NCBI GenBank assembly: GCA_965637545.1
Contig: OZ281495.1
Coordinates: 21,328,001-21,392,000, forward strand
Length of the DNA: 64,000 nt
Direction of reading: 5' to 3'
Origin: Phallusia mammillata
Lineage: Eukaryota
A program made the translations under genes and the position numbers. The notes under the pieces are model-generated. The model did no database searches. It saw only the letters and a list, made by a program, of their open reading frames with translations, and was not told the DNA's origin. This document shows positions 1 to 6,064 of the stretch, piece after piece (within the stretch, counting starts at the first letter, position 1; every line of letters begins with the position of its first letter).

Positions 1-99
1 ATTTATGCAGACATGAAATAAATTAACAAAGCGTTTGACTGTCCCGTCGAACCACAGTTTGGCAAGTCACGTGTCTGGTAAAAGCACGCCGAGCGTTAG

Positions 100-165
100 C
101 AAAAAGTTGTATTAGACAACAAATTATTTGGCCCCTCCCAAAATTTTTGGCTGCCTACGCCACTG
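100..165. mobile_element. Right end of a MITE-like repeat (ends ...GGCTGCCTACGCCACTG); left end not seen
   Basis: GGCCCCTCCCAAAATTTTTGGCTGCCTACGCCACTG resembles a CAGTGGCGTAG-type terminal inverted repeat (TIR). The partner TIR and TSD are not visible, so the start coordinate is approximate. Confidence 0.4.
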
Positions 166-338
166 TAACCTATATGTGTTTCCTAAACTTTGTTAAACAA
201 ATACAAATAACTTTGGGGAACTTGATGAGATAACGGTGTGAGCCACAAATCAATCCCCGCGTATTTTCTTATTTCCTGTCAAAAAGCAAGAAACAACAAA
301 TATAACTACCAGCTCGATCAGACCCGGTTATTTTGCAG

Positions 339-3044
339 TTACACGCCCCGCGGGTTAATATTTATTAACAAATGGGGTCCACTACGCCACGCAGCGGGTG
401 TGTCGTATATCTGCATGGGAGCAGCGAACCTGGGTATCGAGCCCGAAACTTACCGGGATTTTGCAAAAAGACAAATTCACTACATGCTGGGAGACAGCGG
501 ACTTGGAAGTTACGTGGTCGGGTATGGACCCAATCCACCAACGAGGCCTCATCACAGGTACGATATAAACTGATTATCCAACTTCGAGAAAGTTATACCA
601 ATTAATGCAACAGGATAATAGCAAGAGAGCTTGTATACTCATTGAATACGTTTTCATTACAAACGTTGATGTTGGCATCATCGAAAAGCGAATTTCTGTG
701 CAGAGTGATAATTATAACAGCTTCTATTGTGCAAAGATAAAAAAATCGTTTGGAAACGCAAGGGTTCAATAAACAACAATGAAAACACTGACATTAAAGT
801 CGCATGCTGAAAATTTTGACTGGTTCATTTAGCTGTACCACATTCGTGCTAAAGAACATTTCCACAAAAACGATTGACTGGGCATCAACCATTATGAATT
901 GTTCCAGGTATTTCTGAACTACATTCTGTATTTGTTCATTCAGAGCAAGTTCATGCCCAGACGATGTCGTTTGTGGATACGAACATTTTTCAAGTGAACT
1001 CAGGAATCCCCATGTGTTGTATGGAGCATTGGTCGGAGGGCCTGATATCAACGACCAGTACACTGATGATCGAAAGTCTTTTGAGTAATACATTATTAGC
1101 ACGTTTGTCTTATGTCTAAGATTTATCCTTATTTTAATGTTATCTCGGGGTCTGTGGTTTTCAACCTCTTTCATTGTCGACACCGCCTATATTTAAACAG
1201 TTAACAAAGCTCTTATTCTACTACACCAACGATGCGGCATCGATGGCAACCCTGTCTATATGCAGGGTATCTATAGGCTACTAATGCTCAGTGCCGGATT
1301 AACCATTAGGCAAAGTAAGCACGTGCCTACAGGCCAGTCAAAAATCCAGACCACTTTGCAACAACGATCTTTGTGACAATGATTTGGCAACACTGATAAT
1401 TCTATTTTTTTAGTTGGCAACCCTGATCTTCGGGCCACTTATAAAATGTGCCTACAGGCCAGCAGACCCTTAATCCAGCACTGCTATTGCTTACCAATTA
1501 CAAAAGTGTTAAGACTGATTAGGTATATTTATAAATGCCTAATGTTATTTTAGTTGTCTTGTGATGTTTCTATAATCAAAATGTATGGTTTTAGGCACAA
1601 TGAGGTGGCGTTAGATTACAACGCCTGCTTCCAGTCTGCCATCGCCGGTTTAAAGTATCTTGAGTTATATCCACCATTGACCACGACCCCTGAACCGAAC
1701 ACTGCCACCACCACAACTACAGTTCAAACCACCACTCCTGTACCCGGGGAAGCTCCAATCAATCCAGAAGATCTCGAAGAATTCTTTGAAAATAACAACA
1801 ATATTGACTGGGGAAATTACGGCCCGGGTGGCGAAGTTGTTGCAAATACAACTGTCATGGCTGTCAGCAACGGCACAGCGTTCATAAATCAAACTCTACC
1901 CAATAATGGAGAAACAAATATGACAGCTTTTGCGACAACAACTGTTGGAGTAACGGCATCTTCTGCTGCGTTTCAAACAACAACACAGCCATTGGATACG
2001 ACTTACATTACTTCAGCAACTACAGATTTAACCACTTTGAATCCGACCAGTGTTTCGCCTAGCACTTCTCAGCCAGTTAAAACCAGTAGCATTATAACCA
2101 GAACAACGACTTCGGTTACCCCTGTAATCGTCGTGTTGCAAAAGACGACCACAGAAGCACCGAAGGATTTGGTTTTCAAAGGTGAATGCACGTGTCATTA
2201 TTTGTTGTCGTGTGATAGATCATGTTTTACGTATTCGCATTTGAAGCAAATTTTGACAAATGCCATTTGTACAGGTGGAATTTGTGATCCAATGCAAGTT
2301 TTTGACTTCTGTGCCATCGAGCGAAGAAAATTCCTCACGCATCCCGCCCGACAAAAATACGAATGCCGGTACACTGCTTTCGAGGTGCGTTAAAGTCTTC
2401 GTGCGAGCTTGTAATTACATAACAGGCTTTGGTGTTTGAATAATTGATGTTTTAAATTGTATTTGCTACAGGAGTGCGCAGACAAACAGGGTGCCACCTG
2501 CGATGACTTGTGGAGTTTTTATAACTTTTGGAACAACGACGCTTCATACGATCGCTACTTTACTGAACTGGAGTTAAAATGCAAGGAAAAGGAGGAACGT
2601 AAGGAATTCAGAGCTCTAGCTAACTGGAAATTACTTTTTAAACTAGTAATCCGATTTTCTATTGTGTAGTGTACAAACAGAAGTGCTTTGTCCGAGGAAT
2701 TCAAAATACATTCAATGAATGCAACGATAAAGTGCAATCTATTCCCATTCATCCTAAGGAGTCCAATGTGATTTGTCGGTACGTGTTTTCCTGGTATCTT
2801 TCTAAATTTAACTTCCCAAAATTGTAAGTCGTAATTATTTTGCAGGTGGCACGCGTTTCAAAACTGCACGAATGAACAAGTCGGCCACTGTCTTGTTACC
2901 TGGAACACATGGAAATATTGGAATTTCAACAAAGGAAAGCCTCACTTTACACCCGAGGACCGAACATGTTCTAGCGCAGTTATTCGACCGACTTTGTGGC
3001 TGATAAATATTATTTTTGTTTTCTATTTTACTCAACTTGTTTGA
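339..3044 (+). CDS. Glycoside hydrolase family 9 endoglucanase (cellulase), 3' part; 5' exons lie before the window. Exons 339-557, 944-1084, 1595-2181, 2275-2384, 2472-2598, 2670-2778, 2846-3044
   Basis: Spliced translation gives GH9 signatures KWGPLRHAA, QIHYMLG...SYVVGYGPNPPTRPHHR, NPHVLYGALVGGPD and DDRKSFEHNEVALDYNA (catalytic Glu in NEVA). All introns are GT-AG with matching phases. Then a Thr-rich linker, a Cys-rich region and a hydrophobic tail ending at TGA 3042-3044. Confidence 0.93.
1289..1483. mobile_element. hAT-type MITE (195 bp) in a GH9 intron
   Basis: TIR CAGTGCCGGATTAA / TTAATCCAGCACTG; 8-bp TSD CTAATGCT / CTATTGCT (1 mismatch); internal direct repeat GTGCCTACAGGCCAG twice. 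Confidence 0.8.
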
Positions 3045-3519
3045 TTTGGATCCAATGCCTGAATTGTTGCAGTCACTGTGCAAAAGTGCCTTTATTATGT
3101 AAATGCATATATATCACATTGATACAGCCTTCGGTTTTAGAAGTTATGATGTAAGCTTTTCAGCCAAAACCCACTTGGAAAAAACATTGCTAATCATTTT
3201 CATGCGTCGCTAAGCGAGAACAGGAGCACTTTTACACTGCTTTGGCCGCTGGAGTTAGTCTTGTAGTATCGGAAATGCCGATCTGTCGCGTACTTTACGC
3301 TAAATTCATGTGGCAAAATATCACTTTCCATTATGGCCAGCAAAACTTGACTTAATGAGTGTGGTCAAATTCGCTTATCGTTACACCAATGCAATAAACT
3401 TTTATATGATTTTTATGAAGGAATTTAATTTTAGTCAGCAGTTCGGAAAAAATAGAAAACGGTTTAGTATCAGCAGCAAGATAAATAGTGACCCACCACC
3501 ACAAAAAAATCCAAAAAAT

Positions 3520-6064
3520 CTAGATGTGTTCATCACTTTTATCAAAAAAGTTGTTTTCCACAATAAAACGAACACATTGCAAAATATCGTTGCGTTCCCG
3601 GCGCATCTCTGGTTCCAAAAGCTATAAACAGATCACAAAATTAGACAAACCACTAAAATACTTAGTAGGACAAACCAATCCTGTATACTTGCCTTTCGTA
3701 AAAGCGAAGGTCTAGCTAAGCGTGATTTATATGCTGGTCTACTTTGCTGCTTGTTTCTTCCCTTTTTATATTGTCCAGGTTTTTCAGACAATGCAGGTTT
3801 AGCCCCATCTTTTGAGCTACTGTTTGGCAAAGGTATACAACGGTTAAGATCATTTAACCTTTAATCACAACTAGCTTAATTATTCTTACTTGAACTTACT
3901 TAATATTTTTAACTGCTGTTTCCGTGTCACTTAGTTTAGTGACTTCATTTGGCGTTTTTTCTGAGTCATCAGAATCTTCACTGTCATAATTTGACATCAA
4001 CATTCCTAAACCACCCAAGCCTTTCCCTATTGAAGGAATTGCCTCTTCTGCAGGAGTTTCACCATCTAATACATCTGTGGAAAAAGGCAGGAAAAGCTAT
4101 ATGATAAACTGAAGTGCCAAAGCCTTTACCTCAAGCTAACACCTTAAGTTTTAAGTTCATTTATGAAAGTTTGTGTTTGTTATGTCATAAAACCATCTGA
4201 AATAAAAAATGTCTTTGTTGAAATAAGATTATTAAAACAGTAAAGCAAAAAAGAATTAATGTAATAACTAAAACAAACAGTTAATTTCAACATAATACAG
4301 TTATATTTAATTTAAATATGAGTATGTACAGAATGTTCATGTCCTACCATTCTGTAAATCTTGATTAGCAGCAAAGAAATCCATTGGATTGTTTGTGGGC
4401 TTCTGTTGCTCATAAACCACATATTTATTGTTTTCAACATTCCTTGAATTTCCTCTTCCTCTACAGATTGAAAGCAAAAATGATTTTTTCACAAATAGAT
4501 TTGGATTATTTTTATTAAATTTTTTATTAAATTTTTTACCTAAATCTATTTCCCCTGGATCCTCTTCCACCTCTATTTGATCGTTTGCCTCGAAACTTGC
4601 TAGTTAAATAAATTGCAAAAAATTAGAACATCTTAAATTGAAAAAGGTGTAAAAAATGTTGCATAAAGCAATTCTGCTATTTAAAATTTTAGCCATTTTT
4701 TAAATCAATTCCTGAATAATATAATCCTATTTTAGTTGATAATGTATATTTTTTTACACAACAATTTTTTAGTACCTAAAAGATTGGGGCTGTAAAATTG
4801 CACCAGACTTGTGTCTTTCAATTTCTGTGGCTTGTTTCTCTTGAATACGAGCGCTGGTGGGAAATTTTTTTCTTCTTTCCTCTCTCCATTTTTTAATTTC
4901 TTCTGGGCTTTCCAAACTTGTCTTAGGTCCATCTGTATGAACAGACAATAAAACTTTTGTAATAGGTTCAAAAGCAAGGTTGTGTTGAGTAATTGTATTG
5001 GATTCTTTTGTTTGATTGAAAATATAACAAAAGGTATTCTATAGCATTGCAGCATTTTGTTTCTAATAAGCTAATAAATAAATTTATTTTGCTTGCAAAA
5101 AATATGACAAAAATAGTAAAAGTAAAAACACATTTTCGTGTTATGAGATGACTCTTTAAATGTCAAAGAAAATATTTTGAAAGAGTTTCCAATTTATTTT
5201 ACAAAACAACCTATTCTTAGGTGTGGATTTTTATCTGCACAAAATATATTTCCTCCAAATATCAAGGAGTTTCACCACCATGGTAATAAAACTATACTTA
5301 CAAGGGCCATGAAAATTGCGACGGTGAATTTCAACAATTTTAAAATGTGCTTCAAATTTACAACCAGTTTCTGAGCACTGCAAATAAAAATAACATGTAA
5401 AAACACACAAATACATTTTGTAAAAAAATAAATTTAACTTAAGTTACAATTCAGGGTTTACCAACAAAGTCTATGCAAAACACCTAATGGCACCAGTCTG
5501 CAGAACATGGCAGTTCCGCGTGCGCGCATGCACGACCGGTAGGTTCGCATGCGAGACAAATTTCAGCAGATGCAAAAGCAAGTTCAAGAGGTCAATACAG
5601 GCCAATTAAACGCCTTTGGTGCAAAATTTGCGCGTGCAAACCCAAAAAATTGGCGTGCAAAAAATTTTGTTTAAAAAAAATTGCGCGTGCCACATTCTGC
5701 ACTCTGCAGACTGGTAATGGCATATGTTTACACCAAGTATGCAACAAACCTTTATATGTTGTGAAAAGTGCTCTTGCTTTTTCTCTTGTGTTTTAAAACC
5801 TCTGTCACATACATCACAAAAGTCAATAAAGTTTTCAGATTTTTGTTTTTTACCACCCCAACCTGCTGAACAGTTCTCAAGCGTACGTTTCTTGTTAAAC
5901 TTTTGTTTTTGGTAATAGTGTCCATCTCTTGGCAATGCTGATGTATGTACGTTGGTGTAGCTTTTATCTTGACTGGTCTCATACTGCTGTCCACCAAGTG
6001 CAAATTGATTAAATGCGCTTGCGTTGTTAGCCAACTCTTGAAATGTAAAGCAGTTTGGATTCAT
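3520..6064 (-). CDS. NUFIP1: NUFIP1 (FMRP-interacting, box C/D snoRNP assembly factor, Rsa1 homologue). Exons 5750-6064, 5302-5377, 4776-4932, 4540-4599, 4348-4460, 3900-4074, 3693-3819, 3520-3621
   Basis: Two C2H2-like fingers (CDVCDRGFKTQEKKQEHFSQH; CSETGCKFEAHFKIVEIHRRNFH), the NUFIP1 motif LESPEEIKKWREERRKKFPT, an RG-rich segment and the C-terminal RPSLLRKLLEPEMRRERNDILQCVRFIVENNFF. Intron phases are consistent; the last intron is GC-AG. Confidence 0.92.
5493..5714. mobile_element. 222-bp MITE with CCAGTCTGCAGA TIRs and 8-bp TSD, in NUFIP1 intron 1
   Basis: CCAGTCTGCAGA ... TCTGCAGACTGG flanked by exact TAATGGCA (5485-5492, 5715-5722); internal GCGTGC repeats. Confidence 0.85.

What the first reader, a model, noticed from the sequence alone, without database searches (positions are those of the whole stretch)
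339..3044. Cell-surface-tethered GH9 cellulase: catalytic domain, mucin stalk, Cys-rich tandem domain and GPI-type tail
Seen: after the intact GH9 catalytic motifs the protein continues with an about 180-aa Thr/Pro-rich stalk and a 12-Cys region. It ends ...DRTC-SSA-VIRPT-LWLINIIFVFYFTQLV-stop, that is small residues, a short spacer and a terminal hydrophobic stretch with no cytoplasmic tail, which is the GPI-signal pattern. Known: tunicates are the only animals that synthesise cellulose. Plant cellulose synthesis needs a membrane-bound GH9 (KORRIGAN) and a GPI-anchored protein (COBRA), whereas typical animal GH9s are soluble digestive enzymes. Inference: this may be a tunic-building or remodelling endoglucanase held off the epidermal surface, a convergent KORRIGAN-like partner of tunicate CesA.
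Basis: partly seen in the sequence, partly recalled or inferred. Interest (0 to 1): 0.8.

Follow-up and report, generated by a model that had tools for sequence, protein, structure and literature searches.

The report
Tethered double cellulase of a tunicate
A sea-squirt gene encodes a large cell-surface protein with one dead and one working cellulase domain on a sugar-coated stalk, ending in what looks like a lipid (GPI) anchor signal; it is a concrete, untested candidate for an enzyme that trims the animal's own cellulose coat, or for a gut-surface digestive enzyme.

Summary
Window 339-3044 contains seven GT-AG exons, every junction present in transcript contigs from three studies. They encode the last third of a GH9 domain, a 171-aa Thr-rich stalk, two homologous 6-Cys repeats and a GPI-type end (SSA, VIRPT, 16 uncharged hydrophobic residues, stop).

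This is only the 3' third of the gene. A spliced junction, absent from the DNA run, removes the apparent stop of an upstream GH9 "gene" and joins it in frame. My model is one 1,421-aa protein:
- signal peptide
- small N-terminal module with no family match
- Thr-rich linker
- GH9 #1, catalytically dead (DAGD is IDGG; acid Glu is Gly)
- GH9 #2, all three carboxylates intact
- stalk, two Cys repeats, tail

A second species keeps the same dead/live tandem and the same in-frame splice. Three other sequences keep the Cys module followed by small residues, a spacer and a hydrophobic end.

The host carries a tunicate-type CesA (GT2 with GH6 just 3').

Not shown: GPI attachment (no predictor available) and the expressing tissue. 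The KORRIGAN-like tunic role is therefore a hypothesis; a gut-surface digestive enzyme is an equal rival.

The scan also noted the Cys module (s1-366354, same stretch) and another GH9 pseudoenzyme elsewhere in this genome (s1-380842).

The parts
339..557 (+). GH9 domain 2, exon with the His signature (SYVVGYGPNPPTRPHHR). It is exon 17 of 23 in my model of the whole gene. Sixteen earlier exons lie upstream of the window, at C2:21319457-21327502, i.e. window -8543 to -498.
   Evidence: Pfam PF00759 at E 3.8e-43. RNA joints L013 2442>3279 and 3497>3884. Upstream exons.
944..1084 (+). GH9 domain 2, penultimate catalytic-domain exon (ends ...YTDDRKSFE)
   Evidence: RNA joints at both borders.
1595..1667 (+). 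End of GH9 domain 2, carrying the acid catalyst Glu in HNEVALDYNA
   Evidence: Aligns to termite NtEgl 1KS8 residues 410-429 with Glu412 kept.
1668..2181 (+). 171-aa Thr-rich, mucin-like stalk in the same exon as the end of GH9 (aa 1070-1240 of the model)
   Evidence: Composition; exon borders confirmed by RNA joints.
2275..2598 (+). Six-Cys repeat 1 (exons 2275-2384 and 2472-2598; intron 2385-2471)
   Evidence: No Pfam family at E up to 1.
2670..2969 (+). Six-Cys repeat 2 (exons 2670-2778 and 2846-2969; intron 2779-2845)
   Evidence: Homologues P0001, P0003, P0004 and P0005 found with the last exon (window 2847-3041), which holds the second half of this repeat.
2970..3041 (+). GPI-signal-like C-terminus: SSA (candidate omega site), VIRPT spacer and a 16-aa hydrophobic end
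   Evidence: The pattern, but not the sequence, is conserved in P0001, P0003 and P0004.
3042..3044 (+). Stop codon TGA. Transcript contigs continue about 450 nt into the 3' UTR.
   Evidence: X1 record 4 extends 454 nt beyond L013 5990.

Best explanation
The stretch is the 3' third of one gene for a 1,421-aa secretory, multi-domain GH9 protein.

Shown:
- A single spliced mRNA joins two GH9 domains.
- Domain 1 lacks the catalytic base and acid: DAGD is IDGG, and the position of Glu412 is Gly.
- Domain 2 keeps Asp54, Asp57 and Glu412 (termite NtEgl numbering).
- Domain 2 runs straight into a 171-aa Thr-rich stalk, two helical-looking 6-Cys repeats and a C-terminus with the GPI-signal pattern.
- The dead/live tandem and the tail pattern are conserved in other species.

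Inferred:
- The N-terminal signal peptide takes the protein into the ER.
- The C-terminal about 23 residues are exchanged for a GPI anchor at Ser1398 (or a neighbour).
- The Cys modules sit next to the outer leaflet, and the O-glycosylated stalk holds the active endo-beta-1,4-glucanase tens of nm off the cell.
- The dead GH9 domain and the N-terminal module act as glucan-binding parts at the distal end.

The enzyme would thus cut beta-1,4-glucan only in a shell around the cell that makes it. Which epithelium makes it is unknown. I slightly favour the tunic-facing epidermis or tunic cells (trimming or remodelling the animal's own cellulose) over the gut.
For: - Exon chain and in-frame fusion: 13 GT..AG joints in contigs of three studies and none in the DNA-like run. 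They include L013 48>329, which removes the apparent stop behind GH9 domain 1. The frame is open throughout.
- 5' reach: the contigs extend 1,910-1,998 nt 5' of that joint against 1,821 nt of modelled CDS, so they reach the ATG. That ATG has an in-frame TAA 9 nt upstream.
- Catalytic residues: domain 2 aligns to 1KS8 with D54, D57 and E412 kept. Domain 1 has Gly at D57 and Gly at E412.
- Conservation: locus L022/L025 from another organism has YYIDGGYV and RENSVAIDYNAG in domain 1, and DAGD and SNEVAMDYNA in domain 2. It has the same CAG|gt ... cag|GT(G/T)ACTGGACA junction.
- Tail: small residues, a spacer and 14-16 uncharged hydrophobic residues up to the stop in the window protein and in P0001, P0003 and P0004. 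No other window of 19 residues exceeds the Kyte-Doolittle 1.6 threshold, so there is no internal membrane span.
- Host: tunicate-type CesA.
- Context: the genome has at least 12 other GH9 loci. In the 8 of 13 sampled loci where the last GH9 exon could be read, the open frame ends 1-14 aa after the domain. This paralogue is therefore specialised.
- Literature: the field treats a transmembrane GH6 as the KORRIGAN analogue and states it is still looking for epidermal cellulases (PMC10986139). GH9 genes are expressed in the cellulose-secreting epithelium of Oikopleura (bioRxiv 10.64898/2026.03.31.715263). An endoglucanase is induced on siphon injury in Polycarpa (PMC10087333).
Against: - No GPI predictor could be run.
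- The spacer between the best omega site and the hydrophobic stretch is short: 5 residues here and 2 in P0004.
- There is no tissue or stage information for any run.
- No Tfap2 consensus site lies in or upstream of the 5' half of the gene.
- The binding role of the dead domain and of the N-terminal module is inference. The N-module has no Pfam or PDB sequence match and only sub-threshold language-model neighbours, COBRA and CBM_2 at 0.78-0.79.
Confidence: 0.55

Rival explanations
1. Same protein and same anchor, but a digestive enzyme. It would be displayed on the apical membrane of stomach, intestinal or branchial epithelium to hydrolyse algal cellulose from filtered food next to the absorbing cell, like GPI-anchored or stalked brush-border hydrolases of other animals.
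For: Animal GH9 enzymes are generally regarded as digestive (PMC10334666, Background; PMC6011409). The closest solved relatives of both domains are digestive enzymes of termite and earthworm. No epidermal Tfap2-type site was found. A mucin-like stalk plus a lipid anchor suits a gut brush border as well as an epidermis (general knowledge).
Against: The genome already has at least six other GH9 domains with the acid-catalyst Glu kept and no stalk, which could serve digestion. A tethered enzyme with a dead binding domain is an odd design for particulate food. There are no expression data either way.
Confidence: 0.3
2. The hydrophobic end is not a GPI signal. The protein would be held by a short C-terminal membrane span without a cytoplasmic tail, or the end would be clipped and the protein released into tunic or lumen.
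For: No predictor was run. Spacers are short, especially in P0004. A 19-residue window at the very end just passes the Kyte-Doolittle threshold, at 1.63-1.64.
Against: The strictly hydrophobic run is only 16 residues and contains Asn, Thr and Gln. There is no flanking basic residue or cytoplasmic tail. Small residues directly follow the last conserved Cys in all four homologues, while the rest of the tail is not conserved in sequence. That is the usual picture for a cleaved GPI signal (general knowledge of GPI signals).
Confidence: 0.12
3. There are two neighbouring genes (an upstream secreted GH9 pseudoenzyme and the GH9 of the finding), and the joining contigs are assembly chimeras or a minor read-through isoform.
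For: Read straight through, the upstream frame stops two codons after the donor (LQVV-stop). Contigs cannot prove a single molecule.
Against: The junction is a canonical GT..AG, in frame, at the same contig depth as all other junctions in three independent studies. No assembled contig retains the 280-nt intron (tables 2 and 5). The second domain has no ATG or signal peptide of its own between the stop and HDYNEV. The junction and its phase are conserved in another species.
Confidence: 0.03

Closest known systems
KORRIGAN (KOR1, plant class A GH9 endoglucanase of the cellulose synthase complex)
   Same: A membrane-held GH9 endo-beta-1,4-glucanase in an organism that makes cellulose at its plasma membrane. 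The catalytic domain faces the outside.
   Different: KORRIGAN is a type II protein with an N-terminal cytosolic tail and membrane span and a single GH9 domain. Here there is an N-terminal signal peptide, a C-terminal GPI-type signal, a long stalk and two GH9 domains, one of them dead. The best solved relatives here are animal GH9 enzymes, not plant ones. Any likeness is convergent, and no interaction with CesA is shown.
Animal GH9 endoglucanases (termite NtEgl 1KS8; earthworm EF-EG2 3WC3/8IHW)
   Same: Same family and subgroup. Domain 2 keeps D54, D57 and E412 and both GH9 signatures.
   Different: Those are single-domain soluble digestive enzymes of about 430-460 aa. This protein adds a dead GH9 copy, an N-terminal module, two Thr-rich linkers, a new Cys module and a membrane signal.
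Tunicate Gh6 / GH6-1 (transmembrane GH6 cellulase expressed in epidermis; PMC10986139, PMC10334666)
   Same: A candidate cell-surface cellulase of tunicates with the catalytic domain outside the cell, discussed as the KORRIGAN analogue.
   Different: It is in a different family (GH6, acquired by horizontal transfer, against an ancestral animal GH9). It has a membrane span rather than a GPI-type tail, and a single domain. Its epidermal expression is shown; here expression is unknown.
COBRA (plant GPI-anchored cellulose-ordering protein)
   Same: The overall logic is the same: signal peptide, putative glucan-binding N-terminal module, Cys-rich region and GPI signal. COBRA clusters were among the nearest language-model neighbours of the N-terminal exon, at 0.78-0.79, below the 0.9 level at which such hits mean anything.
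   Different: No Pfam COBRA (PF04833) or CBM_2 (PF00553) match even at E 10. COBRA has no glycoside hydrolase domain.
Oikopleura dioica expanded GH9 genes of the house-producing epithelium (bioRxiv 10.64898/2026.03.31.715263)
   Same: Tunicate GH9 paralogues proposed to control cellulose fibres made by a surface epithelium, with unusual added domains (an expansin domain in one member).
   Different: No tandem dead/live GH9, Cys module or GPI tail is mentioned in the passages I read. Orthology was not tested.

Membership tests
Glycoside hydrolase family 9 (domain 2, the one in the finding) | Profile match to the GH9 catalytic domain | tested here: met
   PF00759 at E 3.8e-43, 148.8 bits, for the part in the window. 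Upstream exons match 1KS8 at E 6e-27.
Glycoside hydrolase family 9 (domain 2) | Catalytic Asp pair in the DAGD motif (NtEgl D54, D57) | tested here: met
   GGYFDAGDYMKF aligns to 1KS8 residues 50-61 with both Asp kept.
Glycoside hydrolase family 9 (domain 2) | Acid catalyst Glu (NtEgl E412) in the NEVA.DYNA motif | tested here: met
   HNEVALDYNA aligns to 1KS8 residues 410-419.
Glycoside hydrolase family 9, active enzyme (domain 1, upstream of the window) | Catalytic Asp pair and acid Glu | tested here: not met
   Fold-level match is kept (1KS8 E 3e-18). However, D57 is Gly and D54 is Ile (IDGG for DAGD), and E412 is Gly. The second species has the same IDGG, and Ser at the E412 position. This domain is a pseudoenzyme.
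GPI-anchored proteins | N-terminal ER signal peptide | tested here: inconclusive
   The sequence starts MMHSPN, then a 12-residue hydrophobic core, then KLSSG|Q, which obeys the -3/-1 small-residue rule. It is the most hydrophobic 15-residue window of the protein. No SignalP was available, and the first exon was modelled rather than read-confirmed.
GPI-anchored proteins | Omega site of small residues (omega and omega+2), a short polar spacer, then a hydrophobic stretch of about 15-20 residues running to the C-terminus with no cytoplasmic tail | tested here: met
   S1398-S-A, VIRPT, then a 16-residue hydrophobic end with mean Kyte-Doolittle 1.99 and no charge in the last 18 residues. Same pattern in P0001, P0003 and P0004. 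The spacer is at the short end of the usual range.
GPI-anchored proteins | Positive call by a trained predictor; release by PI-PLC | not testable with these tools
   NetGPI, PredGPI and big-PI are not installed. A bench test is needed.
KORRIGAN-type (plant class A) GH9 | Type II topology: N-terminal cytosolic tail and membrane span before a single GH9 domain | tested here: not met
   The N-terminus is a short signal-peptide-like segment followed by a module and a linker. The only other hydrophobic segment is at the extreme C-terminus. There are two GH9 domains.
COBRA family / CBM2 (for the N-terminal module) | Profile match to PF04833 or PF00553 | tested here: not met
   No match at E up to 10, and no PDB sequence match at E up to 10. 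Only sub-threshold language-model neighbours.
   PF03552 hit at C3:28483830-28484297(-) and PF01341 hit at C3:28480812-28481030(-), same strand, 3 kb downstream. A second GT2 hit lies on C6.

The most novel reading that the evidence does not exclude
Some tunicates may have built their own cell-surface cellulose-processing module from an ancestral animal GH9. It would be a GPI-anchored protein combining, in one chain, what plants split between KORRIGAN (a membrane-held GH9) and COBRA (a GPI-anchored glucan binder with a Cys-rich region). The chain would hold a distal binding tip (N-terminal module plus a conserved dead GH9 domain), an active GH9, a mucin stalk that sets the working distance from the membrane, and a lineage-restricted helical 6-Cys module. 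It would be made by epidermis, would work beside CesA, and would shape tunic microfibrils.
Probability: 0.25. Interest if true: 0.85.

Novelty: new variant of a known kind. Interest (0 to 1): 0.62.

Why it matters
Tunicates are the only animals that make cellulose. How they control fibre length, crystallinity and remodelling is open. The one candidate studied so far, the transmembrane GH6, gives only mild phenotypes, and its authors say they are still looking for epidermal cellulases (PMC10986139). This gene is a precise, transcript-supported candidate with a design suited to acting only at the cell surface.

Whatever its tissue, it also shows three things not described in the literature I could search:
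- an animal GH9 with a GPI-type signal;
- a conserved dead/live tandem of GH9 domains in one polypeptide;
- a 6-Cys module with almost no relatives among 1.8 billion representative proteins.

If it turns out to be a gut enzyme, it is still an unusual membrane-tethered cellulase, but the link to cellulose synthesis falls away.

Tried and rejected
- **Pfam on the Cys-rich tail and the N-terminal module:** no family.
- **Word-index protein search with the 181-aa tail:** nothing among proteins of 100-317 aa. The same search with P0004 region 215-398 found only itself.
- **Exhaustive HMMER with the spliced 181-aa tail:** I did not send that sequence to any other tool afterwards and used the last exon by reference instead. 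That gave four real hits and two repeat artefacts (P0002, P0006).
- **Own-genome search for paralogues of the Cys module:** only the locus itself.
- **AlphaFold2 of the two repeats of P0004 with a 10-row alignment:** all-helical but low confidence, mean pLDDT 63 and pTM 0.42. Foldseek against PDB gave nothing at E <= 0.001. The ESM Atlas shape search gave TM <= 0.39, with an arthropod DUF19 cluster as top row. The fold therefore stays unassigned.
- **PDB sequence search with the N-terminal exon:** no hit at E 10.
- **Tfap2-type site GCCNNNGGC:** 0 matches in the 10 kb of L009, against 0.54 expected by chance, so uninformative to mildly negative.
- **First exon in the second species:** not found in the 3.5 kb available.
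- **Literature:** no paper on a GPI-anchored or tandem animal GH9. Nothing in the supplements of PMC10986139.
- **Two-gene or operon reading:** rejected, see rivals.
- **Processed pseudogene:** rejected, because the genomic locus keeps all introns and the joints occur only in RNA-like runs.
Full report
**1. What is in the window**

Reading window 1-4200 and splicing at canonical sites gives seven exons: 339-557, 944-1084, 1595-2181, 2275-2384, 2472-2598, 2670-2778 and 2846-3044. They form one open frame of 496 aa that ends at the TGA at 3042-3044.
- The first 135 aa match the C-terminal third of Pfam Glyco_hydro_9 (positions 315-443 of 444, E 3.8e-43).
- The catalytic domain runs without a break into a 171-aa stretch with 43 Thr, 16 Pro and 11 Ser. 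T+S+P make 41%, and there are four NxS/T sites.
- Next come 157 aa with exactly 12 Cys.
- The chain ends SSA-VIRPT-LWLINIIFVFYFTQLV-stop.

The two halves of the Cys region are homologous: BLASTP E 2e-9, 28% identity over 50 aa, four Cys in register.

**2. Transcript evidence**

Twenty public runs of one organism hold the stretch. Runs of three studies hold about half of its 31-mers, which is the exonic share, while two other runs hold 84-88%.

I laid X1, X2 and X17 (RNA-like) and X15 (DNA-like) on C2:21325061-21331050 (L013, where window coordinate = L013 coordinate - 2940).
- All three RNA-like runs show GT..AG joints at exactly the predicted borders of every in-window exon.
- They also show five further joints upstream.
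- X15 shows none of these joints and covers the introns (tables 2, 5 and 8).
- Contigs continue about 450 nt past the stop.

This rules out transcripts that end before the last exons, and it rules out a processed pseudogene.

**3. The gene is much larger than the finding**

The window starts inside the gene. Upstream DNA holds the other exons of this GH9 domain and, directly before them, a second complete GH9 unit.

Read straight through, that upstream unit stops two codons after ...GILELQ. The RNA joint L013 48>329 uses the donor CAG|gtagtt and the acceptor catcag|GTTACT. It removes the stop and continues in frame with VTGQTFSEPNPEEL...HDYNEV, the start of the second GH9 domain.
- The joint has the same contig depth as all the others in three studies.
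- No assembled contig retains the 280-nt intron.
- There is no ATG or signal peptide between the stop and the second domain.

I modelled the remaining 5' exons from splice consensus and homology. The contigs reach 1,910-1,998 nt 5' of the joint against 1,821 nt of modelled coding sequence. That fits a start at the ATG at C2:21319457, which has an in-frame TAA 9 nt upstream.

The resulting model has 1,421 aa:

| Residues | Part |
|---|---|
| 1-24 | signal-peptide-like start (MMHSPN, hydrophobic core, KLSSG\|Q) |
| about 25-109 | N-terminal module, no family match |
| 110-165 | Thr-rich linker |
| about 166-607 | GH9 domain 1 |
| about 608-624 | 17-aa connector |
| about 625-1069 | GH9 domain 2 |
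| 1070-1240 | Thr-rich stalk |
| 1241-1397 | two 6-Cys repeats |
| 1398-1421 | tail |

The junction between coding exons 1 and 2 had three possible solutions. I chose the one whose acceptor position and phase match the orthologous exon in a second species.

**4. One dead and one live catalytic domain**

I aligned single exons to the termite endoglucanase NtEgl (1KS8).
- Domain 2 has GGYFDAGDYMKF against residues 50-61, so D54 and D57 are kept.
- Domain 2 has HNEVALDYNA against residues 410-419, so E412 is kept.
- Domain 1 has Gly where D57 stands.
- Domain 1 has QQNGVAIDYNAG where NtEgl has VHNEVATDYNAG, so E412 is Gly.
- The pairwise alignment of the two domains shows IDGG in place of DAGD.

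That D54, D57 and E412 are the catalytic residues of NtEgl rests on my knowledge of the published structure. The GH9 signatures (DAGD and NEVA.DYNA) are established.

Domain 1 is otherwise well conserved. It still matches GH9 structures at E 3e-19 for one exon. It is therefore a pseudoenzyme domain and not a decaying one.

**5. Conservation elsewhere**

An exhaustive HMMER search of 1.84 billion representative proteins with the last exon (window 2847-3041) gave only four real hits. None comes from a named proteome.
- **P0004** is a 398-aa open frame on a 1,485-nt JGI contig. It holds a Thr-rich stalk, two 6-Cys repeats and a hydrophobic end.
- **P0001 and P0003** are last-exon products from an ENA and a Logan contig.
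- **P0005** lies on ENA contigs that hold the same gene in another organism (L022, L025).

That organism has the following:
- Domain 1 has YYIDGGYV and RENSVAIDYNAG, so it is again dead. One exon is 86% identical to ours.
- It has the same CAG|gt ... cag|GTGACTGGACAA in-frame junction and the same VTGQTFSEPNP connector.
- Domain 2 has DAGD and SNEVAMDYNA.
- A stalk and Cys repeats follow, here with one repeat before and at least one after the Thr-rich part.

The dead/live tandem therefore predates the split of these species and is under selection.

After the last conserved Cys, the four C-termini read as follows:
- SSA-VIRPT-(16 hydrophobic)
- GSN-IAQPSRK-(16)
- SSA-AIREFSQSIWTR-(15)
- NGA-TS-(16)

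The pattern is kept and the sequence is not. That is what a cleaved GPI signal looks like, which I infer from general knowledge of such signals.

**6. Host and family context**

The genome has 240 Mb in 312 contigs. A cellulose-synthase GT2 hit on C3 has a GH6 hit 3 kb 3' on the same strand. This is the tunicate CesA arrangement. A second GT2 hit lies on C6. One paper reports two CesA genes in Phallusia mammillata but a single one in most tunicates (PMC10986139). This is a lead to the species only.

The genome holds at least 12 other GH9 loci. I read the last GH9 exon at 13 of them.
- At the eight where my motif search found the end of the domain, the open frame ends 1-14 aa later, with no stalk in the same exon.
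- About half of the domains I could read lack the acid Glu.

The Cys module has no paralogue in the genome at exon-level sensitivity.

**7. What the Cys module and the N-terminal module are**

Neither has a Pfam match.

A shallow-alignment AlphaFold2 model of the two P0004 repeats is all-helical, about three helices per repeat, but of low confidence (pLDDT 63). It has no significant structural neighbour.

The N-terminal exon contains NEWPGEFRAEITF. From memory this resembles the start of CBM2 modules. The only computed support is sub-threshold: language-model neighbours COBRA and CBM_2 at 0.78-0.79. There is no PDB sequence match. I treat "binding module" as inference.

**8. Mechanism and rivals**

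*Shown:*
- one mRNA;
- the domain order;
- the catalytic status of both domains;
- the conservation;
- the tail pattern.

*Inferred:*
- ER entry and GPI attachment near Ser1398;
- an O-glycosylated stalk. At roughly 0.25 nm per residue (general knowledge of mucin-type stalks), 171 aa could span about 40 nm;
- an active endoglucanase confined to a shell around the producing cell, with a dead GH9 domain and an N-terminal module as glucan binders.

The tissue is not known. The tunic reading fits three things:
- the host makes cellulose at its epidermal surface;
- the paralogue is specialised;
- the literature is still looking for epidermal cellulases, reports GH9 expression in the Oikopleura house epithelium, and reports injury-induced endoglucanase (PMC10986139; bioRxiv 10.64898/2026.03.31.715263; PMC10087333).

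The gut-surface reading fits the general view of animal GH9 (PMC10334666, PMC6011409) and the lack of a Tfap2 site. I put them at about 0.4 and 0.3 of the total, given anchoring. A non-GPI fate of the tail gets about 0.12. The two-gene reading gets about 0.03.

**9. Comparison with known systems**

By profile and catalytic residues, domain 2 is a member of GH9. It belongs to the animal branch, judged by its nearest solved relatives.

It is not a KORRIGAN-type protein. The topology test fails and its affinity is with animal enzymes. "Works like KORRIGAN" remains possible but unshown.

It is not a COBRA or CBM2 member by profile.

In the searchable literature I found no animal GH9 with a GPI-type signal and none with a dead/live tandem. 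I file it as a new variant of a known kind.

**10. Limits**

- The exon junctions of domain 1 and of the N-terminal exons are modelled, not read-confirmed.
- Contigs cannot prove single molecules.
- No signal-peptide or GPI predictor was available.
- Run metadata are coded.
- Spliced proteins could not be sent to the large search or the folding tools, so homologue searches used single exons and may have missed distant relatives.

Noticed in passing
window 1-165: One copy of a high-copy interspersed repeat of about 165 bp. At least 40 scored copies at 90-96% identity lie on all large contigs, from 233 candidates. It sits in the intron before exon 339-557.
   Followed up: partly
window about 1261-1660 (L013 4201-4600): An intronic stretch with extreme word depth in the DNA-like run X15 (258,100 against about 85 in the flanks). 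This points to a very abundant repeat family, possibly a SINE or MITE.
   Followed up: no
G000 C5:2144132-2155297, C5:18395943-18409976, C6:15376799-15395080, C4:17614400-17621731: Several other GH9 loci lie as head-to-tail pairs. In six domains the acid-catalyst Glu is replaced (Gly, Gly, Ser, Arg, Thr, Gly). About half of the GH9 domains I could read in this genome look like pseudoenzymes, and more dead/live or dead/dead tandem proteins may exist.
   Followed up: partly
L037 (G000 C5:2155160-2157100): The last exon of a GH9 domain with Arg at the Glu position ends ...GGAASVLSNIGLLHTILLTFLAQWFITWNR-stop. That is small residues plus a hydrophobic end directly behind the domain, a possible second GPI-type GH9 without a stalk.
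   Followed up: no
L022 9148-11064 (ENA contig of another organism): In the orthologous gene of the second species, one 6-Cys repeat sits between GH9 domain 2 and the long Thr-rich stretch, and at least one more follows it. The number and placement of the repeats therefore vary between species.
   Followed up: partly
G000 C3:28480812-28484297 and C6:17812787-17813236: There are two cellulose-synthase GT2 loci. The one on C3 has a GH6 domain just 3'. A paper reports two CesA genes in Phallusia mammillata but one in most tunicates (PMC10986139), which hints at the host species.
   Followed up: no
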